From NCBI GenBank assembly GCA_950097015.1, contig CATNEN010000007.1:4030001-4094000 (forward strand): a stretch of 64,000 nt of DNA, written 5' to 3'. Below, piece after piece: positions 26,008 to 45,084 of this stretch. Position 1 is the first letter of the stretch. Each line of letters begins with the position of its first letter. Made by a program: the position numbers and the translations under genes. The notes below the pieces were generated by a model. It worked only from the letters and a program-made list of their open reading frames with translations, had not been told where the DNA came from and did not search any database. The stretch comes from Macrostomum hystrix (taxonomy: Eukaryota > Animalia > Platyhelminthes).

Positions 26008-26892
26008 TGAATAGGTAGCGTGCAACAAAGTCAGCGCATGGTTGGAAAACAAAATACCACGGAGCAGTTAAAGAGCACATGTGCACGCAGGATGCGAGTA
26101 ACAGTGGACTCTATAGCTTCGAGAACGCTTTACTATAGTCGATACCTGCACATCAGAGCGTCCATACATCCATACGCTAATGCCCGTGCAGACAAGGATT
26201 TCGTTCTGAAGAGTATCTGGACTTGGCTATCGAGCCGGTAGTAAAAGGGTGGATCGAGTTGACCAGATATTACTCGAAATTTCATGAGCTGGTAAATTAA
26301 TTTCATCAATTTACTGCAGCAGAGCTAGACAGCAGAGAAAAGCAGCTAGGGTTACTAAATTAAAGCTAGGGGTCGAATAAATAAAAATATGCAAAATAAT
26401 ATATAGCAATATAATATATATCATGATTGCGTTAACTGCCATTGTGCGCATCACATGCAATCACATGCACATGCAATCTTCTCGTGGACAGTATGTGCAG
26501 CCAGATGCCTCTTTTTCGAAGTCAAACATCTTAACATCTTCATCTTCACACTATCATGAAATCGCTTATGTTTTATGTACATTTATTTGATATTCAAATC
26601 ATTAAATGATTAGGTAATTAATCATGTACAATCGCGTGTAGCTTCAGTTTCATATTTATATTCATTCGTGAATATTTAGAAATTCATTTGATAGCCACTG
26701 TGAATGAAATTAATTAACGTAATCGAAATGCGTCAGCAGTCCAGATAATGTAGAAATTATATCTGTCTGGCCGAATTAAATCTGTTGTGTGGTTCATTGG
26801 GAACACCGGAAAACTGAGTAAAAAATAAGTTATACGCTGCACGTCTCAGAAGCAAGGACCACTAGAAGAAGCTAAGAAGCTAAAGCTAAAGC

Positions 26893-27471
26893 CACCCGTA
26901 TATACACGTTAGGCGGTATAGAACACGGCGAAAACCGCCTAAAAGGCGGTCCATATCATGCTATATGATATCGTAGCATGATATAGACCGCCTTTTTTAA
27001 GCGCATAAAGGCCTTTTATGGCACAAATTTGAACAGCCGTTTCTGCTAATTTTTTTAGTTCGCTAATGCAAAATATCAATTTTACTACTTTTTAGTAACA
27101 ATAATTTTAGTGTCACTAGACAAATATTTGAATGGCTTAGTACAAGTGCTAACAGGTTATATTAATTTATGTAAGCCCAGGGCCTAGCTGTTTATTATTT
27201 TTTTATTTCCAAGTCATTGAAACATTAGACAGTCACATCATTATGGTATATATTACATATTAGTCCATTAGAACTCGAGAACAATAAGACTAAACTTTAA
27301 AAGTATGGCAGGAATAGGATGGCGCTCAGTTTTTAGCTAGGCCTATCGCCGCCTATGCCCTAGTTTAATATAGAAATAATATAGTAAAGCTTAAAACCTA
27401 TGCTAGCTGTATATTGAGCAGGCATAATAATTAGCTATTCTAGTATACTATTGCCTAGCTGCTAGCTGTAG
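26893..27471 (+). repeat. Left TIR (579 bp) of the giant element
   Basis: Matches the reverse complement of 44084-44656 by eye, except one internal block near 27267-27284. Confidence 0.95.
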
Positions 27472-27659
27472 GCCTGTAGCTAGCTAAATTGTATAACTAG
27501 TTGCTGGCATAAATATGTGTATTGTTTGTAATTATAGGCCTAAGTTTATAATTAGGTTCTAGCTATTCTACTACTATGTTGTGTTGTAGGTTAAAGCCAA
27601 TTGTTGCTTCAGAGGCTTTACTTGTTACCACTCCACTCCTTTGTGGCTTTTGCCACACT

Positions 27660-30150
27660 TTGATGGCCTTCACCATACCCTACTGGTCTTCACCATACCC
27701 TACTGGCATTCACCATACCCTACTGGCATTCACCATACCCTACTGGCATTCACCATACCCTACTGGCATTCACCATACCCTACTGGCATTCACCATACCC
27801 TACTGGCCTTCACCATACCCTACTGGCCTTCACCATACCCTACTGGCCTTCACCATACCTTACTGGCCTTCACCATACCCTACTGGCATTCACCATACCC
27901 TACTGGCATTCACCATACCCTACTGGCATTCACCATACCCTACTGGCATTCACCATACCCTACTGGCATTCACCATACCCTACTGGCATTCACCATACCC
28001 TACTGGCCTTCACCATACCCTACTGGCCTTCACCATACCCTACTGGCATTCACCATACCCTACTGGCCTTCACCATACCCTACTGGCCTTCACCATACCC
28101 TACTGGCATTCACCATACCCTACTGGCCTTCACCATACCCTACTGGCCTTCACCATACCCTACTGGCCTTCACCATACCTTACTGGCCTTCACCATACCC
28201 TACTGGCCTTCACCATACCCTACTGGCCTTCACCATACCCTACTGGCCTTCACCATACCCTACTGGCCTTCACCATACCCTACTGGCCTTCACCATACCC
28301 TACTGGCCTTCACCATACCCTACTGGCATTCACCATACCCTACTGGCCTTCACCATACCCTACTGGCCTTCACCATACCCTACTGGCATTCACCATACCC
28401 TACTGGCCTTCACCATACCCTACTGGCCTTCACCATACCCTACTGGCCTTCACCATACCTTACTGGCCTTCACCATACCCTACTGGCCTTCACCATACCC
28501 TACTGGCCTTCACCATACCCTACTGGCCTTCACCATACCCTACTGGCCTTCACCATACCCTACTGGCCTTCACCATACCCTACTGGCCTTCACCATACCC
28601 TACTGGCCTTCATACCCTACTGGCCTTCACCATACCCTACTGGCCTTCACCATACCCTACTGGCCTTCACCATACCCTACTGGCCTTCACCATACCTTAC
28701 TGGCCTTCACCATACCCTACTGGCCTTCACCATACCCTACTAGCCTTCACTATACCCTACTGGCCTTCAACATACCCTACTGGCCTTCACCATACCCTAC
28801 TGGCCTTCATACCCTACTGGCCTTCACCATACCCTACTGGCCTTCACCATACCCTACTGGCCTTCACCATACCTTACTGGCCTTCACCATACCCTACTGG
28901 CCTTCACCATACCCTACTGGCCTTCACCATACCCTACTGGCCTTCACTATACCCTACTGGCCTTCAACATACCCTACTGGCCTTCACCATACCCTACTGG
29001 CCTTCACCATACCCTACTGGCCTTCATACCCTACTGGCCTTCATACCCTACTGGCCTTCACCATACCCTACTGGCCTTCACCATACCCTACTGGCCTTCA
29101 CCATACCCTACTGGCCTTCACCATACCCTACTGGCCTTCACCATACCCTACTGGCCTTCAACATACCCTACTGGCCTTCACCATACCCTACTGGCCTTCA
29201 CCATACCCTACTGGCCTTCACCATACCTTACTGGCCTTCACCATACCTTACTGGCCTTCACCATACCCTACTGGCCTTCACCATGCCCTATTGGCCTTCT
29301 CTACTCCTTTGTGTCCTTCCCCACCTGGATGGATTTTCCTACACTTTTATGGCCTTCCCCACACCTTAATGGCCTTTACAACACCCTACTAGCCTTTTAA
29401 CTCCTATGTGGCTTTCTCCACTCCTATGTGGCCTTCCCCATACCTTGATGGCCTTTCCCACACCTCTGTGGCATTTCCCATACCCAGGTGGCCTTTCCAA
29501 CACATTTTTGGCTTTCACAACACCCTACTGGCCTTCTTCATTCCTATGTGGGCTTCCCCATATTGATGGCCTTTCCCACACCCAGGTGGCCTTCCCACAC
29601 CCTGCTGCCACATACTAATGGCCTTCCCCACATTACGCTGGCCTTCCTTACCCAACGCTGGCCTTCGCCACACTACGCTGCCCTTCCCCACACTACGCTG
29701 GCCTTCCTTACCCAACGCTGGCCTTCGCCACACTACGCTGGCCTTTCCCACACCTCTGTGGCCTTTCCCACACATTTTTGGCCTTCACAACACCCTACTG
29801 ACCTTATTCATTCCTATGTGGGCTTCCCCATATTGATGGCCTTTCCCACACCCAGGTGGCCTTCCCCACACCCTGCTGCCACATCCTAATGGCCTTTCCC
29901 ATACTACGCTGGCCTTCCCACACTGCGCTGGCCTTCCCCATACTACGCTGGCCTTTCCCACACCTCTGTGGCCTTTCCCACACCTCTGTGGTCTTTCCCA
30001 CACCTCTGTGGCCTTTCCCACACCTCTTTGGCCTTTCCCACACCCAGATGGCCTTCCCCACACCCTGCTGCCACATCCTAATGGCCTTCCCCACACTACG
30101 CTGGCCTTTCCCACACTACGCTGGCCTTCCCCTCACAACGCTAGCCTTTT
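27660..30150. repeat. 20-bp minisatellite (CCTTCACCATACCCTACTGG), homogeneous to ~29285 then degenerate
   Basis: About 80 homogeneous copies followed by diverged GGCCTTTCCCACAC units. The 597/583-aa ORFs are artefacts. Confidence 0.96.
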
Positions 30151-30408
30151 CCAAATTCTACTGCCTTTTCTTTCACTTTGGTGCCTTCCTGCCTTCTGAT
30201 TCTCTTCTTTACATACCCGTTTCTCGAGGCAACAGACTACACCCGGGTGAGTCTTGGACGCTTATCTTTTATTTTGTTAAAGCAATCTTCGCTTCGACCT
30301 GCTTTATGGATACGTTTTGTTTTGATTCTTTTATTGTCTTTGAAAATTAGTAATCATCAAATATTTATCCGATTATCCGACACTATTTGCTTATCTGATT
30401 TCAGCTAC

Positions 30409-33400
30409 ATGGGAAGACGAAAGCAGTCTATTGCCAAGACGTCAGTAAAGTATTGTACTCCTGCGTGTCGTAAGCGAGCACGTATCGTTCGAACTCCGTT
30501 GACATCGAAGTGTTGCATCCCGTGAGTATAATGGTTCAAAATTCAAATGATTCACAACTTTTCTTGACTACTCTTTCTTTCTATGCAGTGACACCCAGCC
30601 TGTATACAACAACGACCCAGAAGAAGAAGAATGGTTGGACATCCAAGACGACCCTATCGTTGCTGAAGAAGTCGAGACTCATGACGATCGTGCTCAATCG
30701 AAGTCCGCAAAGCCAAGCCGTTTTAAGACCTTTTGCAGCGAAGAAAACGACGCTTGGAATGAGTTATTTCAGTCAGGGGTCTTGACAGTCGGTTTAGCGG
30801 GTCACTACAACAAGCGCCCATGTGTCTTTTGCGGTTGCGAGACTGAAATATTCCGGTGCCTCAAGTGTCACTTACTATCGGTCTGCTCCACTTGCTTAGA
30901 TGCCCGCCATGCCCATATGCCGCCCCATGCTGTTCAACGCTGGAATGTAAGTTCGATACTATGCAGATCTGGTTTATAATTATGTTGTTTATATTGTATT
31001 ATGATATATATATTATATATTGTATTGAATGCATTTTTACATGAATTGGGTATTTTCTTATATATGATTTCTAGCGACAGTGCTCTTTTTTACCCGCTCG
31101 TCAGGGTGACTTCTTTGAGGCCGTTTCATCACAAGTGCGGCTTTCTCGGCTGTGCAGCTGTCTTCTCTACAGCGTACTTCCGGTCACTATTGTGACTGAA
31201 GATGGTGATTCTCGGCTGAATTCTGCATTTTTTCTGTTTGCAGTAGCTTACTTTGTTACTTAGCTTCTTAAAATAACAAGTCACGTGAATGTTCTGAGCT
31301 GCAATATGACGCCGATTGCTACAAAAACAAACGTCATATTTAGGGGACACTGATATTCTAGCAAGACTTTACTCAATCAGTATCAGTACTCACTACCTCA
31401 TTTCAGGAAGCGAACTAAAAGCAAATCTTGAGATGTGTACATGTACTACGTACCACGCAGCTCTTCTGGCACATGGATTTTGGCCCTTGCAGCCTCGACC
31501 AGAGGGCTCTCGGGAACTGACTGCCGTGTCTATTGAACTGCTTCTTCTAATTGATTCGCTGAATTGCAACTGCACAGCATCGTTGTCTTCGATTTGCAGT
31601 GCTATTAGGCGCTCCAAGAAGTCTATGTGGGCGCAGTCATCCACATCAGCAAGTTTTCATCAGACTGGCCCAACTTGCTATTATTTTGTAATAGGTGTGT
31701 CTTAACAATCAGCCATTCTCATACATTAAATTTTTAGATCGATCTATTTAGAGCGCTCAACGTAACTGGGGCGTTCCGGTCTTTCCGCCGTGTGCTGCAG
31801 AGCTTTCGTTGGGGAAGAAAGCCATCATGTCCAGCATGCTATGTGGTAAAAGATCTTCCTTTCATATATGTACGAGTATAACCATGCTCTCTCATTGCAA
31901 TACACTGATTGGCTTTTATTAAAATGTCATGTAACTTCTGTAGGTTGATTCGGACTCTGATGCCGAAAAGAGCAGTCCAATTTTCCTGATGATGGACGCC
32001 TGCTTCGGTCTCCGCCATCGCCGAACTGCAGGCAGAGCTGCTTTACCAACTCCAACAGGCTTTTTCGTTGACGTTGACCTTACTGATGATCACAATCCCT
32101 CTGCAGGACACTGTGCGAACTGGAGAGCGGGTGGAAGAGGTCAAACTCTAACGACTGCTGCAGACCGGGGCAAGCTAGACGTGTTTGGGGCCTTTGCTGG
32201 TTCCTGCAGACACTCTGCTATACGCTACCTGTCCGACGTTACTACTGCAGGCGAACGGTAACTAGTTGATTGTAAAAGAACTTTGTTGCAGGACTAATTA
32301 GTCCCATTTTTGAAATGGGTAGTGGCAGAGTGGTTATTGTTTTACTTTGTAACTTATTTTGTTTGCTAACTCTAGAGAGAGTTAGTGGGTTGGATAATAA
32401 GGAATGCCTAGCAGTTGGTGTGAGCTGTCTACGAATTAGAAAGGAGACTGACAGAATAATAGCGAGCAGAGATAACGAGAGCGAGAGAAACTGGGCGGAG
32501 TAAACAAGAAAAGTGCGGAGAATGAAGGAGTGTATGCTTAATTTTTTAAGTTCAAACTCTGATCAATTTAATCACCAGGCTCAACTACGCCACAGCAATG
32601 GTTGCCAAAATTTTGGGGGACGTTCCTGCAATGGTTCCCATTGTCGTGTCATACGATATTGGGTGCAAACTGGCTGGTCGGTTCAACGACACTCGGTTGC
32701 CATTCGCGATACCGGCGTTTCATACCTACGGGCACGTTCTGCGCTGTCAACTGACGTATGGAATTCGTTCTATTACCTCCGTTGGCTTGACGGATGGTGA
32801 AAGCGTAGAGAGAATCTGGGCAGATCTTCGACGCTTCAGCCCTCAGGTTAAAGAGATGTCGCATGACAATCGGCGCGAATTTCTCAATTACCTTGTCGAC
32901 AGCATGAATTTTCACTGCATTATAAATATAAGTATGGAAGTTATATCCGCTGATTAATTATTTGCATTTATATATTTCTCCATAGAATATTGAATTGATA
33001 TCTTATTGGGCCTTATTGTTCTCGTAACAAATATAGTTGCTAAAATTTCGCGTGAAAAATGCGGCAAGCAATTTACGCTACACATGTTTTTCTTTTTCAG
33101 CGACCTGGCTGAGTCACCGCCGAACAGTCGAAAAGAAGGCAGTGCAACAATTCGAAGCTGGCTTTGCTGCAATTCAAGCGCATCACAATGTGCACAGTGA
33201 GTCCTGACTCATTCCCCATTTTGACAGCTGGGTGAACTGAAGCAAAGCAGAGTTAAGTGTCTCGCTAAAGGACTCAAATTGTCGACCTTCAAGTTGTGAG
33301 TCCGACGCTCTAACCACCAGGCTACAACCCCATCATTAAATATTAATAATATATATATTACATTAAATATCCGCTGTATCTCCATTAGTGACTCTTGAAG

Positions 33401-34089
33401 AATTCCTTCAAGAGACAGCCGATTGGAGGCAAGAGCTGATCAATGTGCTATCTGCGCGTGAGTCATCCTCGCCCAAGTCTGAGACTATCCGAAAACTATT
33501 TGGCATTGCATGCGAGCGGCAGTATCTACTCGAACATGCGGCAACAGAGCGTGGTCAGCGTATGAACAGGCTACTTCGAGTAGCCACAGACAAGCTGCTC
33601 CGCAAGACAAAGATAGTCTGTTCAAGGTTTAACAGCAAAAATCCAAGGGACCTACTTGATTGGAATGACTTCATTTCGACAGACGCCTCTGGCTTCGAGC
33701 AGCTTATAAATGGAGGCACTGTCGGTGTCGAGGTCCTAACTCACAAGGTGCAAGCCGTAAAACTTCGCGATCTGTACCTTCGATGCTCGGAAGAGTCGCG
33801 CCTGGTGACTTCAGAGGCAAAGCGTGTTTATAATTTTCTTTCTGCTGCCGTTCTAACCGTGACCTCAGAGTTGCAAGCCGCCCGAGATAGCAACAGCCCA
33901 CTCACTGCGGTATTATCTCTTCGGCTAAGTGGTATATTGCGCTTACGCCATGCTCATGAAGCCGCTTTCCCGTTTGGAGCAATGGCGGAGACACAACCGG
34001 ATTCTGAGTCGTGCGATTCTCATGACAGTGAATCGGAAAATTCGCAAGCTTTATTGTCTGCCAGTGAGGATGACTCCGAGTTTTCTTAA
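30409..34089 (+). CDS. KDZ (Kyakuja-Dileera-Zisupton) transposase with N-terminal Cys clusters; 9 exons, ~816 aa, apparently intact
   Basis: Exons 30409-30521, 30589-30946, 31075-31204, 31407-31687, 31738-31842 (or 31845), 31944-32257, 32579-32931, 33101-33196, 33389-34089 sum to 2451 nt (817 codons). Motifs: CVFC..FRCLKC..CSTCLDARHAHMPPHAVQRWN, CSC..CTC..LLAHGFWP, SCPAC, LMMDACF (D), GSCRH..GER, VSYDIGC (D), AFHTYGH..C, GLTDGESVERIW (E). Confidence 0.88.
33205..33331 (-). mobile_element. tRNA-derived SINE fragment in intron 8 of the KDZ transposase
   Basis: The minus strand begins with a tRNA-like head (GTAGCCTGGTGGTTAGAGCGTCGGACTCACAACTTGAAGGTCG), followed by a non-tRNA body. Confidence 0.5.
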
Positions 34090-35467
34090 CGATTCCATCA
34101 AAGCTTGCGAATTTTCTGCTGTCAAATTTTCTGTCAATTTTCTGCTGTCAAAATTTCTCCTGAGAAGCAGCTTGCTGTTTTGTTTATTGTTAATACAATT
34201 GAAACAAAACTTTTCAGCCACGAATTTCAGCATTAATTTTTCCCAAGCTATGCACGACCCAACCTCTATAATCTCCGGAAAGCCGTCAGCACATCCCGCC
34301 ACAAAGACATCTGTCTCTCGGCCAATGAGAGAGCGCCGTCTTCCTATCCCATCTCCCCATACTCCCCATCTGCTTCCCCATGCGCCTTCAGACCCGTCTC
34401 CCCACAGTGTATCCCGTTTTACCATCATAATTTGAGCTGTGGAATGTTTCATTTTTTTCTGGCTCTTCCTCAACATCCCTTCCCCAGCTTCCCCCCAATC
34501 CTCATCGATTTTACGTGAGAATTCCGCGCATAGGTTTCTGGCACAGTGCCCAGTTAATAAATAAAGCCGAATGATTTGATGTACTGCTTTTTCCTATTTC
34601 TAAAGCACTTTGCTAATTGCTCATCCTGCATTAATCACTACTGAGACAATTATTTTTATTAAAACCGAAGATCACTAAGTCTGACCTTTCTCTCAGGTCC
34701 AATCGAGTTATTATGTGCAAGCTGTGTTTAAATGTGGAATCGACGTGTCAATTGTTATTTATTTATTCGTTTTTCGCCACAACAGTACAAGTCTCCAAAA
34801 AAAACCAACAAACGTAGCTTTTACTGCTTCGTCAAACCAGCTATCGAGAATTTCAAAGCTTTATAGAGAGAGAAGGACAAAGAGCGACTAGCTTAATAAT
34901 TTCATACATGTATTAAATTGCTAGTTCTTACAATGGTAAAGAGATTTACCCTCATGCCACTTGTTCAGTAAACCGTTCTACGTTCAGTATACTTTTAAAT
35001 TACTATAGCTCAATAACCCAAATGATACTGTCAAAACACGAGCTACGATCGAACATATTCACATCATTCGCGCCGAGTACTACGCCCATAGCCAGTGTAG
35101 ATGTTGCTGCTCACACTGCTGTCGAGGACTAGCATGGAACTGGTGCTAATTAGGTTTTTGACTACCTGCATTTACGAGGGTATACTGCATGCAGTACTAA
35201 GCGTATAAATTTTTGTAGTAAAAGGGAATTTTTCGACTTGGCTATATAGGATATTTTACGCAATTCAGAAATTTCGAATTCAAAGATCCTCAGAGAAGCA
35301 GAAGAAAGTGTCTGTAGTATTCAGTAGCACACATCTTCCCAGACGAAGAATCAAATGGTTTCATCAGAAATTGTCGACGATCTATTTAGTGTATTTTCTC
35401 CAGCGGGGGTCTGTACTCAAAATTGACGGGGCGGAGGAGGCCGTACTCACATTCTAACCTCAGGCCT

Positions 35468-35738
35468 ATGGAGGAAAGAATAGAATGGAGTGCCAATCTG
35501 AGCCGGTTCTTTTTGTTTCGCTCGATCTTCACTTTTAACATCCCGTTTCCGGCCGTTCCTTCCTATTGGCTCGTGACTGCCATAGACGAGCTCGTTTTCG
35601 TCCCCCTCTGAAAGTAATATCGTGGACTATAATGCTAGTGGAAAAAACGAGTTCGTCTATGGCAGTCACGAGCCAATAGGAAGGAACGGGAACGGGATGT
35701 TGAAAGTGAAGATCGAGCGAAACAAAAATAACCGGCTC
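35468..35738. mobile_element. MITE-like hairpin element with ~95-bp inverted arms
   Basis: Arms at ~35500-35598 and ~35644-35738 (GAGCCGG...CCGGCTC). Direct repeat CTCAGGCCT at 35459-35467 and 35738-35746. Confidence 0.7.
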
Positions 35739-38237
35739 TCAGGCCTCAGTGTATGGGTGCAGAGGGTGCCGCGAGTCAAGCTGCTATTGAGGGGTCAGAT
35801 TTTTTCAATACTGATCGAATTGCGTAAATTACATTGGGCTGGGGCAGAGTTGGCTGGGTGCCAAATTCCATTCACGAAATCTGCAAGCAGGCTGCTCAAA
35901 TTTAACTTTTTGAAAATTCGCACCTCGGCATTGGCGGAGAGACAAATGTACTTACAATGTAGAGCAACCTCCCTGTCCTTAAATAAGTCCTGTCCTCATT
36001 CTGAGTTCACCCAATTTAAAGTTCAGAGTTCTCTTCGAATTGCTAGAGTTTGATAGATGAAATTCGGGCGATGGGAGTTTGATCCCCTAACTTCTTTCGC
36101 AGGAGGAATTCCGCTCGTTCTTATATAAAAGTCAGCACCCTGTAAAGACGCCGCCATGCTTTTATAATATAACTCGTATAATAGACAGCACAGTCCATTT
36201 GCCCAAACGCTTGCCTAAAAAAACTTTCAACTCTTTCTCTTTCAACCTAGCTGCAATGGCCATTCTAACCCTAAGCGTCCACTAGTCAGTGCGCTAGCAG
36301 TGCGAACCCCACCTGTCTGCGTTATTGCTTATTCATATGTGATTTGCCACTTTTTGTAACTTGCACGTTGTGTGACTTTTTTAGTACGACTAAATCATAT
36401 ATGTTTGACGCGTGTCAGTTTTTACGTTTCTATAAATTATTTTTGTTTATTAGCCCAATTAGCTGAGGCCAACTGAATACTAAGCAAGTAAGCGCGCAAA
36501 AAGCCATCCATTTTTGGAGCAGAGGCACAGTCTGTGTTGTAGTTTACAAGTAAGGATAGCGGAACTGTGATCGAGCCGTCTTTACCGGCCCGTTCTATAG
36601 CGAATCATTCAAGAGAACCCATATGGAAGAAAACTACGACTGCCGAGTCCGATTGATTTGTCTCTTAGGTAGAAATAGAGTTGAGTTAAATTGAGAAATT
36701 AAAAGAAAATTATACCCGCTTTATAAAGGATAATGGCCAGAGTTGTCGGTGGGTGTGTAGCGGAAGCTGCGAGGGCGCCAGGCGAGAGCTGCCGCGAAGA
36801 CAGCAGGGGCGAGGGATCCGGATCGATGCTCCTGCACACTAGCTGGGGACGTTATGGCAGGAGCTACTAAGCAACAGAGGTGCTAACCTAATGTAACTGC
36901 TGCAGGCGTGTGGTGGCTGGCCCACCGCGGGGTCGTCCCTAAATCAGGTGGGCTGAACAGGTTTCTGGATGAGTTCGCAACGTCCAGACCATTCGCTGGA
37001 ATCCGCTGCACCGCTAGCAAAACGCAGAGAAGGATTTCTTGTCCATCTCAAATATATTGAAGCTGTATACATAGATGTACATGCGTATTTCTCCATTTCG
37101 TGTTCGTATGATGATGAAAAACTGTAGTGAATTTAAGTAGTCATAGTAACGCGTGGAGGGCCAGATTCTTACATTAGCTACTGCCGCAAAGGTATGCAGC
37201 GCCCCCTTCACGCAGGCTTGGTGCTCTCCTTCCAGCTGGCGCACTTTCAGCGCCGATTTTCGTGCCTTTTCAGCACCCACTTGGTGCCGTATAGGCGCTG
37301 ATTTGGCGTCACTTGAGCGCCTATAAACACAATTGGCGCCGTTTGCGCTACCTAACCGAAAATCCTGGCTACGCCCCTGGTGCTGATTGGTGTGCCAGGT
37401 CATAGACAACCCGATAGCGGTCACTTATTCAGCTATGACTTTGAGATCAACCAGTAGAGCCACCAACACGGCAGCCCCTAAATGCTTGCCAACTGGCTGG
37501 CCCTGCAGAGGTCCTAAAGTTTCCAAAAACGAGAGCCCAAACACGTGTTTCGAAAACTAAAAAAAAATAATTACAAGTCCGAACAAGTGAACCGTCCAAT
37601 CGCTGATCGATATCAAAATCGCTCCAATGAAAAATAACAGTAGCAAAGGATAAAGTATTTTTTATATTACTTTTGTAATTAAATATATTTTACTAATTAC
37701 TAGCATCAACGTTACTATTATTTGAGGGGACTTCATTATATTAAAAGTCTTTGAAAAATAACATAAATGGCTGTATAAAATGCAAATTTATGTTAGAAAA
37801 GTATGTTTTAAAAGGTATCTGTATAAAACTTTGAGAAGGTGGACAAAAGAAGCAATGGAAGCTGAAATGGCAACACTAAATAGCGTGAATTGCATGCAGT
37901 AAAGAAACAGCTGTAGGTCAACTAGGTTGTAAAACAGTAAAGGGCTGTGATTCCTGTGAAATAATTCACAGAAATTTAATTACCGGCTGAAAGTACGGTG
38001 ATCCCAACAGAAACAAACACTTGAGCTAAAAGAGATTCCATAAGGAATCGATTATACGAGGGGTTTATCATTTTGCTGCATTGAACTTTTCAATTGATTG
38101 TTTGTTTACCACTGCTACGAAATTCGAAAATTTTACTGTTAAAAGTTCTATAGATATACTTTATAAAATTTTAAATGCCGGACGGAGCGTTGAATCGTAG
38201 GTTATCATTATCCTTAACAGATACGTGGTTAGACTTA

Positions 38238-39060
38238 TGAGGGACAATCAAAAAGTTCTTTCACTGCCTTTTTTCAGCGCATGGGGCTTGCCTCAAACAC
38301 AGACAAATTGTGTCCCTTGGATTCACCATTTCCATGGAGGCAAATGTGACTTCGATGGTGAAGCTCGCAGTCGGAGACTTAGGATCTCCACCACTCAGTG
38401 TCGTCCACGAGGACAGTTGAGTGACTGTTGCTGAGATAGCAGAGGCCTGTGGCATCAGTTATGGCTGCACAGCCCATCCTACGGCTCAGTTGAAAATATC
38501 GAAGGTTTTTGCCAGATGTGTGCAGAAACTCCTTACTTCACTGATGCAGCGCAACAGGGCGCAGCAGCTGATTCACATTATTCAATGCCGCCAAGAGGAG
38601 TTTATTATGTCGTGACAGGGGATAAGTCGATATTTTCGCAGCTGAACCCACTCCACTGAAGGACAAGGCGACACCATAGATGAAGAAGCAGGTGGGCGCC
38701 ATCTTTTGGATTCGCTGGGAGTGCTGTTGATTGAGTGGCTGCCTGAGAAGCGGGGTCACCGTAAACTCCTACTCCACCTGAATGTCGATATCAAGGAAAA
38801 GAGGCTTGATAATGCCACCAGCGCTAGCCCATGACAAAGCTTCGGACAATGCGCAGGCAGACACCTGCGTTCCGTCCCACAGCTTTATCACACTGCTCAT
38901 CGCCAGAGCTGTCCCCTCAGAATTTGGAGGTGGCAGCTCTCTAGGTCCAGAAGCTGGTAATTTCGCTTCGTGGTGCAAACACCCAGGTGAAGAATGGTAC
39001 GCTGAAGGCATCAACTAACAACCAGAGCGCAGTGTCTCACTGCGCAAGAACCTTTTTGAG
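38238..39060 (+). mobile_element. Degenerate mariner-like transposon nested in the giant element
   Basis: Fragmented motifs across frames: TVAEIAEACGISYG, KVFARCVQKLLT (cf. WVPKLLT), VVTGDKS (first D), DNA. Many stops and frameshifts; only partial TIR similarity. Confidence 0.7.
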
Positions 39061-39147
39061 GGTTTAGGTCTTTAGGATGATTACAGTTACATAATCGTAG
39101 AAAATCGATTTCCATAGCTTTAAAAAAACTGTTTATTCATTACTCAT

Positions 39148-41209
39148 TTAATAATCCACCACTACTATTGTTTCTTGGCTGCTACTCTGGACCGGTTGCA
39201 CAGCGGTCCTGCCGACTTTGATCGGTTGCACAGCTGTCCCGCTGACTTTGACCGGTTGCACAGCTGTCCCGCCGACTTTGACCGGTTGCACAGCTGTCCC
39301 GCCGACTTTGACCGGTTGCACAGCTGTCCCGCCGACTTTGACCGGTTGCACAGCTGGAGCTGTCCCGCCGACTTTGACCGGTTGCACAGCTGGAGCTGTC
39401 CCGCCGACTTTGACCGGTTGCACAGCGGTCCTGCCGACTTTGACCGGTTGCACAGCGGTCCTGCCGACTTTGACCGGTTGCACAGCTGTCCCGCCGACTT
39501 TGACCGGTTGCACAGCTGTCCCACCGACTTTGACCGGTTGCACAGCTGGAGCTGTCCCGCCGACTTTGACCGGTTGCACAGCTGGAGCTGTCCCGCCGAC
39601 TTTGACCGGTTGCACAGCTGTCCCGCCGACTTTGACCGGTTGCACAGCGGTCCTGCCGACTTTGACCGGTTGCACAGCTGTCCCGCCGACTTTGACCGGT
39701 TGCACAGCTGTCCCACCGACTTTGACCGGTTGCACAGCTGTCCCGCCGACTTTGACCGGTTGCACAGCTGTCCCACCGACTTGGACTAACGCATGTGAGT
39801 CCCTGCTCATTCCCGGTAGCACAGGTGAGTCGCTGTTCGTTCCCGGTAGCACAGGTGAGTCGCTGCTCGTTCCCGGTAGCACAGGTGAGTCGCTGCTCGT
39901 TCCCGGCAGCACAGGTAGATCGCTGCTCGTTCCCGGCTGAAGTGGTGAGTCGCTGTAGAAAGTGACTTCACTGATCTTTTTTTCAAATTTTATTTGGGCC
40001 CTGGCATCCCAGACTTTTTGAAGCTCTGTTTTTGAGAGCTTTTGTGGGTGAATATCACTTCGAACTCCGGCCGGCCAGTGAATCCATCGACCGTACAGTG
40101 CAACTTTTCCAAATTGCAACTGCCGTCTGCCAATTGCTCTTTCTAAAAGTAGAAATAAAAGCGTGTTTATGAGCATAATTGAAACTAGCAATGTTTATAA
40201 TTTTGTACGTGATTTACTTGCAACTTAATATAACGGAATTTCAGTTGTTGCAATTATCTAATGTAATATTCGTAATTCTCAAACATAGCATAGCCTTGCA
40301 ATCATTTTAACACGGACGAGAGTCCGTGTTAAAGTACCAGAAATTAATACGAGTGGAAAAACGATGATGTGGCTTCGAATAGGACCCAGGCATGCGATTG
40401 TCAGCCCGTACTTACTAAACTTGTTCTGCAGCATATTGCTGACAGCAATGCGCAAGGTAGCCGCAGTCTTAGGCCGAGAAGCAGAAGCAGACGACACGCA
40501 CGATTGAAAAGCCAAAAAAATGTTCGATTTTAGATAAACTGTGAATAACTAAGATTAAAAATTTATTTGAATACTGTCAGTAAACAAGTACCTGCGATTT
40601 TACGAGATACTTACTGAGGCGACATTCGCTCGCTCACAGAAGCCTACGACTTCCTGCGATTCATACACGGTAGTGGCACCTTCAGCTTTGGAATGCAGCA
40701 GCACGATAACGTGGTAGCCTGCATTATCGGCTGAATCGACCTTGTAGTGAAGGCATACATTGAGATTAGCAACAAAGTTCATAATTGCCTAAGGGAGTAT
40801 ACTACGTGCATGAATGCATGCATTCGAACTTTATTGCTTACGATGCTGTTAGCCATGCTAACCAGCTTCTTCCGCTGAAAAGAGGCGGTATCTGTGCGTT
40901 CTGCGGCTTGGGCACGCAAGGCTTCCTTCCCCTGCTTGTCAAGCAAAGCATAGCGCTCGCGAAGGCCGCTGACTTGATCTGAAATTTAGGATTACCATTC
41001 GAGCTTAAAGATCTCATAAGCATTAAAAAATTTGAGAGCTAAAGTGACACTGTTTCTTAAACTATTTTATGTTGAATGTGGCATCTGAGTGAGTGGATTG
41101 AATAAATTTAAATCTGAATTAAATGCATACCAACAACGTTTAAACTAGGGTCGTAATTAATTCGCTCAAATACGTTCCAAGCACTAGGCCTTCTAGCAGA
41201 ACGTGACAT
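39148..41209 (-). CDS. Transposon-borne accessory gene: N-terminal HMG-box-like region, unknown central domain, repetitive C-terminus (~505 aa)
   Basis: Phase-consistent exons 41209-41131, 40978-40842, 40788-40615, 40548-40416, 40142-39148 sum to 1518 nt. The N-terminus MSRSARRPSAWNVFERINYDPSLNVVDQVSGLRERYALLDKQGKEALRAQAAE resembles HMG-box helices. Confidence 0.72.
39185..39960. repeat. 30/36-bp tandem repeats inside the last exon of the accessory gene
   Basis: GACCGGTTGCACAGCTGTCCCGCCGACTTT units (encoding GGTAVQPVKV) and a second 30-bp unit (encoding SSDSPVLPGT). Unit lengths are multiples of 3. Confidence 0.9.
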
Positions 41210-41363
41210 CTGAAATTTTAAAGAACCAATACCAGCTTTTACATAGCGCAAAAATCTAGAGACTTATATTGATAAGTCCTAAGTCTTCCTTTAGACTAAT
41301 TCCTTAGGTTACTTGTTATAGTAATCTAATAGCTTATAATAAGTACTTATAGTCGTCATACTT

Positions 41364-42716
41364 CGGGTGTGTCATAAGTAATGTCACTGAGGGTAAAACA
41401 GACCAACTAACAATCGCAGATGAACGAAACTGTATCAATCAACAACATAGTGTCCCCCAATATCAATCACCCTCTGGCAGTGCTCGTACAGCTTCTCTAC
41501 CTCAGCCTGCAGGTGTTTTTCCTCCAGCTGTCGGAACCAGTGCAACGCGGCTTCTTTGACCTCATCATGGTTTGTGAAACTTCTCTGGGAAAAGTCTGCA
41601 TTAGCCATTTAAAGAGAAACCTGTCGCACAAGTTGAAGTCTGGGCTGTAGGGACTCTGCCAGAGCAGGTTTACTCGCCGTCCAGCCAGAAAATCCGAAAC
41701 AGCCTGACAGGTGTGGGGCCGTGCGTTGTCCATCTGCCACAGAACTTCGTTCAGGTGAATCGGGTTTGACCGGAGCGTGCGCCAGAGGTTCCCAGTGTGT
41801 CGGACAAAGTCGATGAAGTACTGGCCATCGACCTTGGTGTTTGGCGGAGTTGTACAGATGGAGACTCGTTTGTTTGGCGTGAATGCCACCAGCAGCATGG
41901 TCTTCTTGTCTGAGATAGACCTCCTGGTCACAGTCAGCCTGGAGTCCCCAGCTCCCAGCCAGCAGCGATTGTCTGCCTTGCTGCTTTTGCCATCCAGGTG
42001 GAGCCAGGTCTCATCCTCAACAACCAGGCAGTTTAGGATGTCATCCAAGCCCCGGCTGCTGAACACCTTGAGGATCTGATTGGCGCAGTTCACACGGGCC
42101 TGACGTTGGTCCGCAGTGAGGTCATGGGGCACCCAGACCGAGCAGACGTTTCGGAGATGGAGATCCTCTGTCAAGATATGATGGACTGTCTTGAAATCAA
42201 TCTCCAAGCAGTCCGCTAGCTCCCTGACAGACTGCCGCGGGTCTTCCTTGACCAGGTCGCTGATGACTTCGATGTTCTCTATTGTCCTGGTTGAACATGG
42301 TCGTCCAGATCTGGCGGCATCTCCCAATTCGAACCCAGGATCAGTAAAGTTCTGAAACCACCTGTAAATTGTCCTGCGAGTTGGGCAGTTGTCTGGCAGT
42401 GTGTTCCGGAGATCCTCCTCTACTTCAAGTGCAGATTTTCCAAGCTTGAAGCGAATGAAAGCATTGAACTGGATGTGCATCTTGTCGTGATTCATGTTGA
42501 GTTTTGCTCGTTGCAAAAAGAAGATTTCATCGCATTGCGCTTGCTAAATCTGATTAACACATTCTTGCGACAGTTTTGGCCATAGACATTAAAATTGCTG
42601 CTCAGGTGTGGTGGCAACTTCTCAATAAATGTACTTTCAGAATATAATATATTTGGATGATTATTGCTTTGGGTTCCCGCACAACAACCACAGTGACATT
42701 ACTTATGACACACCCG
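41364..42716 (-). mobile_element. Mariner (DD34D) transposon, 1353 bp, nested in the giant element
   Basis: TIRs CGGGTGTGTCATAAGTAATGTCACTG and CAGTGACATTACTTATGACACACCCG. TA at the right flank; TT at the left flank. Confidence 0.93.
41435..42516 (-). pseudogene. Mariner transposase with a single frameshift near the C-terminus
   Basis: HTH region, WVPHDLT, VEDETW (D), MDNARPH (D) and YSPDFNLCD (D, 34 residues after the second D). After FKWL the canonical C-terminus (..CQRVIDIGGHYVVD, stop 41435-41437) continues in another frame at ~41600. Confidence 0.88.
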
Positions 42717-42779
42717 TAGTATAATGGAAATATATATTAAAATAAGCTTCCGTGAGTGACCAGGTTGTGGCATACATAC

Positions 42780-43330
42780 ATTCGCCTGGAGCACCAAGGT
42801 GTGCAAAAGGCCATCGGGTAAGTGGATGGCCAGATTGAGAAGGCTAACTGTATCAGGGATAGGCCATCAGGGTATGGGGAAGACCACCAGGGTTTGGGAA
42901 AGGTCATCAAGGTGTGTGGATGGCCATCAATGTGTGGTGAAGGCAACCAGGGTGTGGGAAAGGCCAGCAGGGTGTGGGGAAGGCCACCAGGGTGTGGGAA
43001 AGGCCACCAGGGTGTGGGAATGGCCATTAAGGTGCAGGGATGACCAGCAGAATGAAGTAGAGGCCATCACGAGGTGTGGTGAAGTCCAGCAGGGTGTGGG
43101 GAAGGCCAGCAAGGTGTGGGAAAGACTATCAAGGAATAGTAGTAGGGTATAAGGCACTCATTGTGCCAGCAGGGTATAGGAAAGGCCAATAGGACATAGG
43201 AATAGGTGCTAGGGCATAGGAAACATTATCAGGGTATGTGGAAGGCCAACAGGGTCAAAAATGCTAGCAGGATATAGAAAAGGCCAGCAGGGTATTTAAT
43301 AGCTGGCAGGATTTAGGGAAGGCAAGCATG
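42780..43330. repeat. Degenerate ~20-bp minisatellite (AGGCCAGCAGGGTGTGGGA-like), inverse of the left subterminal array
   Basis: Its reverse complement resembles the units at 29300-30150. Confidence 0.85.
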
Positions 43331-44083
43331 ATATAGGTTTATAAGAAAGATGCATCTAATGTAAGTGATAAAATATATAAAATTACTAATAATATACTAT
43401 ATACAAAAGACAACAGTACTATTTTATTTTGAATATTGGTTATCACTATAGTTTATAGTACATGATTGACTATGACCCATAGCATAGTAATAAAGATGGC
43501 ATAGTTTTCACTAGGAAAAAATTTGGGGGTCAATTTTTGGGCCAACTGTATGCCATCTATGCTTCTTTGCCAACTGTTTCTTTGTACTGTTTCTAAGAAA
43601 ATAGTCATGATGTGAACAGTGATTAAATATAGTGTACACCTTTTAGAACTGTACTCTGTTCTACTGTGGTGTGCTTTGCTATTGTTATTGTTGTTGTGCC
43701 CCAGGGGCCTTAGTGTGCCATGATTGTGTGCTGAGCATACTAGGGACCCTTATGTATAGAATTTTCTATGGCAGTGCTTATCCCCACAGTGCCATAAAAT
43801 TTTTTGTCTTATTCCTATGGTACTGTAGGAATAATTTCCTGCTTATCTGGACAGCACACTAACAATTATAGAAATATATTTTTATATACTTCAAGAAGAC
43901 ACCGTATTAGTTAACTAATTGCAAAAAAAATCTGAAAATTTTAATTTGTTTAGGCCCTACTTGCTTTTAAAAATGGGAAGAAAAGAAGAAAATTACAAAA
44001 AATGATATCACAGTAAAATCACAGTAAAATGATAGATGATAGGACAGCTATCTTGTCAGTGTGCCAAGCAGAAGGCACTCATT

Positions 44084-44656
44084 CTACAGCTAGCAGCTAG
44101 GCAATAGTATACTAGAATAGCTAATTATTATGCCTGCTCAATATACAGCTAGCATAGGTTTTAAGCTTTACTATATTATTTCTATATTAAACTAGGGCAT
44201 AGGCGGCGATAGGCCTAGCTAAAAACTGAGCGCCATCCTATTCCTGCCATACTTTTAAAGTTTAGTCTTAAAAGTGCCAGCAGGACTAATATGTAATATA
44301 TACCATAATGATGTGACTGTCTAATGTTTCAATGACTTGGAAATAAAAAAATAATAAACAGCTAGGCCCTGGGCTTACATAAATTAATATAACCTGTTAG
44401 CACTTGTACTAAGCCATTCAAATATTTGTCTAGTGACACTAAAATTATTGTTACTAAAAAGTAGTAAAATTGATATTTTGCATTAGCGAACTAAAAAAAT
44501 TAGCAGAAACGGCTGTTCAAATTTGTGCCATAAAAGGCCTTTATGCGCTTAAAAAAGGCGGTCTATATCATGCTACGATATCATATAGCATGATATGGAC
44601 CGCCTTTTAGGCGGTTTTCGCCGTGTTCTATACCGCCTAACGTGTATATACGGGTG
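44084..44656 (-). repeat. Right TIR (573 bp) of the giant element
   Basis: Reverse complement of 26893-27471. Confidence 0.95.
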
Positions 44657-45084
44657 CTAAAGCACAGAAGCTATAACATTGATCAAGTCAAACTGGGATT
44701 ATAACAAAAGACAGCTCACTACGTGTTTAGATAAGACATAGTTTGTATTTATTTAATTCTAATGAAATGCTCTTTTACCACTCAATTAAACTTCCGCTGT
44801 AATAAGCTATCAATGCTTAGGCGCAGATGACAAAGATAATTTAGTGGCACGCATTTAACTTTATCGTTGTCCGTGAATTTGACTCTGTGGTCCTGAATTG
44901 AATTGCTACTGAAAATAACTCTAAACTTATTTGCAGTTTTATATTTTTATAAAACGTATAAGTCACACGCTTTTGAGCATTCTGTAAACAGAGAATTTTT
45001 CTGCTTAGTTTGTTTTCGACTTCTGAAGTTTTCCGAGTATATTTTTTGTTACTAAATTAAAATAAATAGTCTTCTTGGTTTAAG

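What the first reader, a model, noticed from the sequence alone, without database searches (positions are those of the whole stretch)
39148..41209. Previously hidden HMG-box-like accessory gene inside the transposon
Seen: five exons join without stops; only the last appears in the ORF track. The N-terminus (RRPSAWNVF..LRERYALLDKQGKEALRAQA) resembles an HMG box, followed by an unknown domain (..GRWIHWPAGVRSDIHPQKLSKTELQKVW..). Established: HMG boxes bend DNA, and HMGB1 assists RAG and Sleeping Beauty transposition. Inference: an element-encoded architectural cofactor.
Basis: partly seen in the sequence, partly recalled or inferred. Interest (0 to 1): 0.8.

Follow-up and report, generated by a model that had tools for sequence, protein, structure and literature searches.

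The report
KDZ transposon's GTF2I-like DNA-binding gene
A flatworm jumping gene of the KDZ type carries a real, expressed second gene, but its recognisable DNA-binding part is a GTF2I-type repeat (known from the vertebrate factor TFII-I), not a demonstrable HMG box.

Summary
A five-exon, minus-strand gene (CDS 41209-39148, 477 aa) lies inside a 17.8-kb KDZ transposon of Macrostomum hystrix. Transcript contigs from four runs of one study confirm three introns exactly. They also carry the Macrostomum spliced leader, joined directly at the ATG.

Exon bounds needed correction: exon 3 starts at 40740 and exon 4 at 40512. Intron 3 has a mutated acceptor (TG instead of AG). It is retained in most contigs, which gives an early stop.

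The gene belongs to the element. Of 22 paralogous loci in this genome, 15 lie 4-8.5 kb from a KDZ transposase, always convergent. A M. lignano homologue has the same layout.

The HMG-box reading is not supported. Pfam, PDB sequence searches, hhalign (about 1% probability) and an AlphaFold model of a homologue's N-terminus all fail to show it. Only a weak ESM-model hint remains.

Profile links, Foldseek's top ten matches and VIA Z scores of 7.6-9.7 all point there. A tail of tandem peptide repeats follows it.

Most likely the protein is a sequence-specific DNA-binding cofactor or regulator of the element. That step is inferred, not shown. I found no published description. The scan holds one unchecked first-reader note of a similar two-gene KDZ element elsewhere in this genome.

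The parts
41131..41209 (-). Exon 1 (79 nt, ends in phase 1). ATG at 41209-41207. The spliced-leader acceptor AG is at 41211-41210.
   Evidence: Junction 41131|40978 and the leader tail at 41210 are in the contigs. The leader sequence is printed in PMC8629364.
40842..40978 (-). Exon 2 (137 nt), holding the 'LRERYALLDKQGKEALRAQA' stretch.
   Evidence: Junctions 41131|40978 and 40842|40740 are in all four runs.
40615..40740 (-). Exon 3 (126 nt), a beta-rich middle region.
   Evidence: The acceptor at 40740 comes from the contigs. It is 56-58% identical to paralogues.
40513..40614 (-). Intron 3 (102 nt, GT..TG), mostly retained. Retention gives an in-frame TAA at 40602-40600.
   Evidence: It is contiguous in the X1-X3 contigs and skipped in one X4 contig, depth 11.7 against 8.95. 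The acceptor is TG in all three copies. Paralogue A has a canonical AG at the homologous place.
40416..40512 (-). Exon 4 (97 nt): a linker plus the first helix of the GTF2I-like repeat (LR..V..mL..KF).
   Evidence: It is 65-71% identical to paralogues.
39148..40142 (-). Exon 5, stop codon included: the rest of the GTF2I-like repeat, then the tandem peptide repeats.
   Evidence: Junction 40416|40142 is in all four runs.
39985..40467 (-). GTF2I-like repeat (I-repeat) coding region, interrupted by intron 4 (40143-40415).
39190..39955 (-). Coding minisatellites: about 19 copies of VGGTA(PA)VQPVK and about 5 of SDSPVLPGTS. Unit lengths are 30 and 36 nt.
   Evidence: Every paralogue family has a repeat tail in the same frame. 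The VQPV[KR]VG motif is kept with synonymous changes in a family whose I-repeat domain is 39% identical.
39132..39137 (-). AATAAA poly(A) signal, 10 nt after the stop.
   Evidence: Read directly.
30409..34089 (+). KDZ transposase gene, intron-rich and convergent with the accessory gene.
Evidence: PF18758 at 4e-23.
26893..27471 (.). Left terminal inverted repeat of the element.
   Evidence: 100% complementary to 44084-44656. Homology to the other copies ends at 26889 and 44657.
44084..44656 (.). Right terminal inverted repeat.
27633..30150 (.). Left subterminal array of about 120 20-bp repeats (TGGCCTTCCCCACACC..). Candidate binding sites; this is inference only.
42856..43134 (.). Right subterminal array of about 13 copies of the same repeat, in inverted orientation.
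41363..42631 (-). Nested mariner/Mos1-like element, 153 bp upstream of the trans-splice site. It is not part of the gene.
   Evidence: Pfam HTH_48 and DDE_3 above their cut-offs, HTH_32 just below. It is absent from the C1 copy.

Best explanation
The stretch is the second gene of an autonomous KDZ (Kyakuja-Dileera-Zisupton) DNA transposon in Macrostomum hystrix.

Shown:
- It is transcribed, receives the host's spliced leader at its ATG, and is spliced into five exons.
- It encodes 477 aa in four parts: a short helical N-terminus, a beta-rich middle, one divergent GTF2I-like repeat, and a variable tail of tandem peptide repeats.
- It travels with one clade of KDZ transposases, always convergent and 4-8.5 kb away, in two Macrostomum species.

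Inferred:
- The I-repeat binds a specific DNA sequence of the element. The 20-bp subterminal repeat arrays and the 575-bp inverted repeats are the obvious candidates.
- In doing so it marks or assembles the ends for the transposase, or controls the element's expression. TnpA of En/Spm and the Myb-like protein of PIF/Harbinger act this way.

In this particular subfamily the acceptor of intron 3 has changed from AG to TG. Most mRNA therefore keeps the intron and would give a 118-aa protein without the DNA-binding domain. A minority is spliced in frame at the old position.
For: Expression and structure: spliced contigs of 831-862 nt from four runs lie on the minus strand with GT..AG junctions, and their 5' tail equals the last 24-25 nt of the 35-nt Macrostomum leader.

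Gene family: at least 22 loci in this genome carry the domain, and exons 2-5 are collinear in diverged copies.

Linkage:
- 15 of the 22 loci have a PF18758 match 4.3-8.5 kb away, on the other strand and always convergent. Chance would give about 0.1.
- The linked transposases are 32-77% identical to the window's.
- M. lignano PAA69595.1 lies 5.8 kb from a convergent KDZ gene.
- The element has perfect inverted repeats, and its three copies are about 98% identical.

Domain identity:
- A profile of the exon-5 domain finds M. lignano homologues and proteins made of tandem modules. One of these passes Pfam's threshold for PF02946 (37.4 bits against 27).
- hhalign of the flatworm-only profile against those modules gives 95.7% probability, E 8.5e-9.
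- PDB profile searches put GTF2I repeats on top.
- In the AlphaFold model of homologue P0007 the domain has pLDDT 91-96. Foldseek's ten best matches are all GTF2I domains at probability 0.95-1.0, and VIA gives Z 7.6-9.7.
- The next matches are NRF1 DNA-binding domains solved on DNA, at Z 5.4-5.7.
Against: - No DNA-binding or transposition test exists, and the target sites are a guess.
- The window's own exons do not reach Pfam GTF2I by themselves. The link runs through homologues, and the fold was predicted for a M. lignano protein only 27% identical in that domain.
- The flatworm-only profiles hit GTF2I structures in PDB at only E 0.21-0.85.
- Pairwise divergence of the transposase and the accessory protein does not correlate in the short pieces compared (rho 0.09), so co-descent is not shown.
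- Other KDZ clades in this genome lack the gene, so it is not essential to the KDZ superfamily.
- In this subfamily most transcripts cannot make the domain at all.
Confidence: 0.6

Rival explanations
1. One reading: the N-terminus is an HMG box and the protein is a DNA-bending architectural cofactor, as HMGB1 is for RAG and Sleeping Beauty.
For: - A short motif resembles the end of HMG helix 2 and the start of helix 3. hhalign aligns it in that register.
- A conserved N-terminal W..F motif recurs in the window, the E family and the M. lignano homologues.
- Three HMG-box clusters are among the ten structural neighbours of the ESM model of P0007 residues 1-45, at TM 0.49-0.50.
Against: - No PF00505 match.
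- No HMG box in PDB sequence searches.
- hhalign probability about 1% over 16-21 of 69 columns.
- The AlphaFold model (H15-30, H34-39, H46-71) matches only coiled coils, at Z up to 4.3, and finds no HMG in the Atlas search.
- Paralogue family A lacks the N-terminal motif.
- The M. lignano homologues have prolines where HMG helix 3 should run.
Confidence: 0.1
2. The protein regulates rather than assists. It would be a transcription factor or repressor for the element, or a truncated inhibitor made from the intron-retaining mRNA. It would not be needed for the cut-and-paste reaction.
For: - TFII-I family I-repeats act in transcription (established knowledge).
- Most mRNA of this subfamily encodes only the N-terminal 118 aa.
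- Other KDZ clades do without the gene.
Against: Nothing here separates this reading from the cofactor reading. The conserved convergent position within intact-looking elements fits both.
Confidence: 0.2
3. A captured host gene carried as a passenger, with no role for the element.
For: - KDZ and other large DNA transposons do capture host genes. Fungal TET/JBP genes are an example (PMC12730594).
- Cellular multi-repeat I-repeat proteins exist in a protist-like contig.
Against: - The same gene sits in the same place and orientation in at least six diverged element lineages and in two species.
- The frames stay open, and exons are conserved while introns are not.
- Seven of the 22 domain loci have no KDZ match listed within about 24 kb. 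Four of them carry stop codons and one still abuts a transposase fragment, so no intact host copy stands out.
Confidence: 0.07

Closest known systems
GTF2I-like repeat (I-repeat, Pfam PF02946) of the vertebrate factors TFII-I, GTF2IRD1 and GTF2IRD2
   Same: - The motif order is the same: LR..V...L..K[FY], then [WL]P.G[VI]P, then L..[IL]......I.F.
- The predicted helix-strand-helix-strand fold matches, with Z 7.6-9.7 to ten solved repeats.
- In the TFII-I family the domain is regarded as DNA-binding (established knowledge).
   Different: - There is one repeat, not up to six as Pfam describes for this family.
- The sequence is very divergent. The window's exons and the M. lignano proteins do not reach Pfam's threshold on their own.
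- Tryptophans replace the vertebrate consensus around the LP.G motif.
- The gene is carried by a transposon in a flatworm, not a host transcription factor.
Accessory DNA-binding proteins of two-gene DNA transposons: the Myb/SANT-like ORF of PIF/Harbinger and TnpA of En/Spm (CACTA)
   Same: A second gene inside the element encodes a DNA-binding-type protein, and the element has long subterminal repeat arrays like CACTA elements. PMC12730594 describes the Myb/SANT protein of the Harbinger-type Nuwa families.
   Different: The transposase superfamily (KDZ) and the DNA-binding fold (I-repeat) both differ. No binding or recruitment has been shown here.
HMG box (PF00505); HMGB1 as a host cofactor of RAG and Sleeping Beauty
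   Same: Only a resemblance of about 20 residues, plus an N-terminal basic-aromatic motif.
   Different: There is no profile, profile-profile or fold support. HMGB1 is also a host protein, not element-encoded.
Retention of the third intron of the Drosophila P element (established knowledge)
   Same: An element's own mRNA keeps one intron, which truncates the protein before a functional domain.
   Different: Here the cause appears to be a mutated acceptor (AG to TG) in one young subfamily. No tissue specificity is known, and the truncated gene is the accessory gene, not the transposase.

Membership tests
GTF2I-like repeat (PF02946) | Sequence match to the family profile above Pfam's threshold | tested here: inconclusive
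   The window's exons (scanned apart) and the M. lignano homologues give no hit. The related tandem-module protein P0010 passes (37.4 bits against 27). It links to the flatworm family by HMMER (E 7e-5 in 1.8 billion proteins) and by hhalign (95.7%).
GTF2I-like repeat (PF02946) | The fold of the solved GTF2I domains | tested here: met
   The test used an AlphaFold model of homologue P0007:66-200, with the window's and paralogues' exon pieces as alignment rows. pLDDT is 91-96 over the domain. Foldseek's top ten are all GTF2I domains. VIA gives Z 7.6-9.7 over 74-82 residues. The window's own protein was not folded.
GTF2I-like repeat (PF02946) | DNA binding | not testable with these tools
   This needs EMSA, DAP-seq or similar.
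HMG box (PF00505) | Sequence match to the family profile | tested here: not met
   - No hit at E up to 10 on exons 1 and 2 scanned apart or on contiguous paralogue N-termini, and none at E up to 1 on P0007 or P0004.
- hhalign against eight HMG boxes of this genome gives 0.6-1.2% probability.
HMG box (PF00505) | L-shaped three-helix fold | tested here: inconclusive
   The AlphaFold model of P0007:1-72 finds no HMG box, but it rests on a shallow alignment of seven rows (pLDDT 74.6, pTM 0.35). The Atlas's ESM model has three HMG-box clusters among ten neighbours at TM 0.5 over 45 residues.
Component of a KDZ transposon | Lies between the element's terminal inverted repeats | tested here: met
   The inverted repeats are at 26893-27471 and 44084-44656, and the gene is at 39148-41209.
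Component of a KDZ transposon | Recurrent linkage to KDZ transposases in diverged elements and in another species | tested here: met
   15 of 22 loci are linked, all convergent. So is M. lignano locus L046. Animals outside Macrostomum could not be searched.

The most novel reading that the evidence does not exclude
The I-repeat, so far known mainly from the vertebrate TFII-I family, may be an old DNA-binding module of KDZ-type transposons. The vertebrate factors, one of which (GTF2IRD2) already carries a fused hAT transposase, would then descend from a domesticated transposon accessory protein. In addition, the weak TG acceptor of intron 3 might act as a switch that decides between a truncated and a full-length protein.
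Probability: 0.12. Interest if true: 0.75.

Novelty: new variant of a known kind. Interest (0 to 1): 0.58.

Why it matters
KDZ elements are usually described by their transposase alone. Here one animal clade of them consistently carries a second gene. This puts KDZ beside PIF/Harbinger and CACTA as a two-protein system.

It also names a concrete candidate for how the ends are recognised. It places the GTF2I-type repeat, a domain of unclear origin, in mobile DNA of an invertebrate and in protist-like proteins. That makes the origin of the TFII-I family testable.

The three copies are about 98% identical, with perfect inverted repeats, and at least two are transcribed. The element may therefore still be active in a laboratory flatworm, which would allow experiments.

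Tried and rejected
- The word-indexed protein search found nothing with the exon-5 domain, and found only the query itself with P0007.
- PDB sequence searches with the exon-5-only profile and with P0007 gave only chance rows.
- My first model had exon 3 starting at 40788 and exon 4 at 40467. The transcript contigs and the paralogue comparison overturned both.
- Whole-protein alignments with exon pieces as rows misplaced the short pieces. I used domain-wise alignments A7 and A10 instead.
- The test for co-divergence of the transposase and the accessory protein was not significant.
- The Pfam 'PMG' hit on the repeat tail is compositional. UniProt's automatic names for the M. lignano homologues ('Plus3', 'Photolyase/cryptochrome') have no Pfam support.
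- Three literature searches for a known KDZ accessory gene or a GTF2I-transposon link gave nothing relevant, and two broader ones were unproductive.
I worked out coordinates by hand instead.
The joined N-terminus (exons 1+2) and the joined I-repeat (exons 4+5) of the window's own protein are therefore untested.

Full report
**What is there**

On the minus strand, an ATG at 41209 opens a reading frame that runs through five exons to a TAA at 39150-39148. An AATAAA signal lies 10 nt after the stop. Only exon 5 appears in an ORF list. Its 3' two thirds (39190-39955) are two 30-bp minisatellites that are open in five of the six frames at the 50-aa cut-off, which lengthens the ORF.

**Source genome**

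The assembly has 220,453,370 bases in 42 contigs, the longest 35,345,953. These are exactly the figures for Macrostomum hystrix in Table 1 of PMC10468722.

**Expression and exon structure**

Four runs of one study hold the stretch. Their record does not state the kind of library. Their contigs are spliced and carry a leader, so they are RNA.

The contigs, 831-862 nt long, lie on the minus strand. They cover:
- 41210-41131
- 40978-40842
- 40740-40416
- 40142-39951 and beyond

The three junctions have CT..AC ends on the plus strand, which is GT..AG on the minus strand.

The 23-24 loose letters at 41210 are the reverse complement of the last 24-25 nt of the 35-nt M. lignano spliced leader printed in PMC8629364. 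The leader's own ATG falls in frame directly before the gene's ATG. The acceptor 'tttcag' stands just before 41209.

One contig (X1) lacks a 30-nt insertion that the two other genomic copies have, and the X2 and X3 contigs carry it. At least two copies are therefore transcribed.

**Corrections to the model**

Exon 3 starts at 40740, not at the upstream in-frame AG at 40788 that I first chose. This drops 16 residues.

Intron 3 needs more explanation:
- In runs X1-X3 the contigs run straight from 40738 to 40416. That puts a TAA at 40602-40600, after four extra codons, and ends the protein at 118 aa.
- In X4 the assembly graph splits at exactly 40614 and 40512. One path keeps the 102 nt (depth 8.95) and one skips them (depth 11.7).
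- The skip is in frame and begins at the GT after exon 3, but it ends in TG, not AG.
- All three copies read 'TTTTTTTG|GCT TTT CAA TCG' there.
- Paralogue A reads 'tttttAG|GCT CTT CAA TCT' at the homologous place, encoding A-L-Q-S against the window's A-F-Q-S.
- The longer exon 4 also restores the spacing seen in the M. lignano homologues.

I conclude that exon 4 is 40512-40416. I also conclude that this young subfamily has a mutated, weak acceptor, and that the weak site explains the retention. This rests on one contig in one run plus comparative evidence, so raw reads should confirm it.

The final model is:
- exon 1: 41209-41131
- exon 2: 40978-40842
- exon 3: 40740-40615
- exon 4: 40512-40416
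- exon 5: 40142-39148
- product: 477 aa

**It belongs to the transposon**

The element spans 26889-44657. Its inverted repeats of about 575 bp are 100% identical, at 26893-27471 and 44084-44656. Arrays of a 20-bp unit lie inside both ends, about 120 copies on the left and about 13 inverted copies on the right.

The KDZ transposase is confirmed by Pfam (PF18758, 4e-23). It lies upstream on the plus strand, so the two genes converge. Two other copies of the element are about 98% identical to this one.

A Mos1-type mariner is nested 153 bp upstream of the trans-splice site. The C41 copy shares it and the C1 copy lacks it.

A profile of the exon-5 domain finds 22 loci in this genome. I compared them with all PF18758 matches:
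- 15 of the 22 have a KDZ match 4.3-8.5 kb away, always on the opposite strand and always convergent.
- With roughly 60 KDZ loci in 220 Mb, chance would give about 0.1 such pairs.
- The seven without a KDZ match listed within about 24 kb include four with stop codons. One of those four still abuts an N-terminal transposase fragment.
- 15 of the 17 best KDZ matches, the intron-split clade, carry the gene.
- Other KDZ clades, for example those with 827-aa open frames, do not.

The linked transposases are 32-77% identical to the window's. In M. lignano, the homologue PAA69595.1 lies 5.8 kb from a convergent KDZ gene.

A correlation between transposase and accessory divergence was not significant in the short pieces available (rho 0.09). 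Co-descent is therefore plausible but not shown.

**It is under coding constraint**

In paralogue families A/B/C, exons 2-5 are collinear with the window's. Identities are 29, 56, 70 and 49%, with no stops. More distant families keep the exon-5 domain at 25-44% identity. Every family continues in the same frame into its own tandem peptide repeats.

The window's VQPVKVG and family E's VQPVRVG differ at the third base of six of seven codons. The tail motif is therefore conserved at the peptide level.

**The 'unknown domain'**

- Pfam finds nothing on the separate exons, and the word-indexed search finds nothing.
- The exhaustive HMMER search with the nine-paralogue profile gave 11 hits.
- Four of them are M. 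lignano hypothetical proteins with the same layout (P0002, P0003, P0004, P0007).
- Three are metagenomic proteins made of 4-8 tandem copies of the module (P0005, P0006, P0010).
- P0010 passes Pfam's threshold for the GTF2I-like repeat (37.4 bits against 27, E 3.4e-9).
- hhalign of the flatworm-only profile against the tandem modules gives 95.7% probability, E 8.5e-9, over 67 columns.
- The flatworm-only profile's single PDB hit is a GTF2IRD1 repeat aligned end to end (E 0.21).
- With the tandem modules added, nine GTF2I-family repeats are among the ten best hits, the best at 4e-5.
- An AlphaFold model of P0007:66-200 used the window's and paralogues' exon pieces as separate alignment rows. It has pLDDT 91-96 over the domain.
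- Foldseek's ten best matches to that model are all GTF2I domains, at probability 0.95-1.0 and TM 0.53-0.66 by target.
- VIA-align gives Z 7.6-9.7 over 74-82 residues. The next matches are NRF1 DNA-binding domains solved on DNA, at Z 5.4-5.7.

Exons 4 and 5 therefore encode a divergent I-repeat. The first helix (LR..V..mL..KF) is in exon 4. The W..WP.GV..D..P..L....L..[VI]W.....I.F part is in exon 5.

**The HMG claim**

- Pfam HMG_box does not match exons 1 or 2, contiguous paralogue N-termini, or P0007 and P0004.
- PDB searches with P0007 and with the N-terminal profile list no HMG box.
- I built a profile of eight HMG boxes from this same genome. hhalign against the N-terminal family gave 0.6-1.2% probability.
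- The AlphaFold model of P0007:1-72 is of moderate quality (pLDDT 74.6, pTM 0.35, seven rows). It has helices 15-30, 34-39 and 46-71 and a disordered first 14 residues.
- Foldseek, VIA-wide and the Atlas shape search find no HMG box for that model.
- Against this, the Atlas's own ESM model of P0007 has three HMG-box clusters among its ten neighbours, at TM 0.49-0.50 over residues 1-45. For so short a stretch that is only a hint.
- Family A lacks the N-terminal W..F motif.

The HMG reading is therefore unsupported but not excluded. The joined exon 1+2 of the window was not scanned or folded.

**Mechanism**

Shown: an expressed, element-borne protein with an I-repeat fold.

Inferred: it binds element DNA and either helps the transposase find or pair the ends, or controls the element's expression. 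This follows from the use of the I-repeat in TFII-I-family proteins, from its structural likeness to the DNA-bound NRF1 domain, and from the example of TnpA and the Harbinger Myb-like protein. The subterminal 20-bp arrays are the natural candidates for binding sites.

In this subfamily most mRNA would yield only the N-terminal 118 aa. That product could be inert, or it could act as a competitor. Nothing here tells which.

**Novelty**

I found no paper that links GTF2I repeats to KDZ or Zisupton elements, or that describes a KDZ accessory gene in animals. The library is not exhaustive.

The scan holds an unchecked first-reader note of a similar 'HMG-like accessory gene converging on the transposase' on another piece of this genome (s1-258427). 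That agrees with the paralogues found here.

I rate this a new variant of a known kind: a two-gene DNA transposon with a new superfamily and DNA-binding-domain pairing.

Noticed in passing
window 41363-42631: A nested Mos1/mariner-like element with an open 339-aa transposase frame (41497-42516, minus strand) sits inside the KDZ element. The C41 copy shares it and the C1:17.53 Mb copy lacks it. Either the KDZ element moved or was duplicated after the mariner landed in it, or the C7 and C41 copies are a segmental duplicate.
   Followed up: partly
window 40513-40514 (minus-strand 'TG' before exon 4): The intron-3 acceptor is TG in all three young copies. The paralogue on C29 has AG at the homologous place. 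One transcript path still uses the TG site.
   Followed up: yes
P0005, P0006, P0010 (JGI metagenome proteins); L057: These proteins are made of 4-8 tandem GTF2I-like modules. P0005 sits in a gene-dense eukaryotic contig among kinesin, Ras and SAM-domain genes, with no KDZ gene nearby. I-repeats therefore exist as cellular proteins outside animals.
   Followed up: partly
model of P0007:66-200 against PDB 8k3d and 8k4l: The I-repeat model superposes on the NRF1 DNA-binding domain solved on DNA (Z 5.4-5.7, rmsd 2.3 over 65 residues, 20% identity). P0006 also has a weak Pfam Nrf1_DNA-bind hit (E 0.0039). The two domains may be related.
   Followed up: no
G000, for example C1:19427868, C7:10981807, C25:9643636: Other KDZ clades in this genome have long intronless frames (827 aa) in many near-identical copies, with no I-repeat gene detected nearby.
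   Followed up: no
window 35500-35738: Paired inverted repeats lie in the spacer between the two genes: 61 nt at 90% complementarity and 46 nt at 98%. This could be a hairpin or a small nested element.
   Followed up: no
P0007 (A0A1I8GVQ9), P0003 (A0A1I8GNQ1): UniProt's automatic names for these M. lignano homologues ('Plus3 domain-containing', 'Photolyase/cryptochrome alpha/beta domain-containing') have no Pfam support and look spurious.
   Followed up: partly
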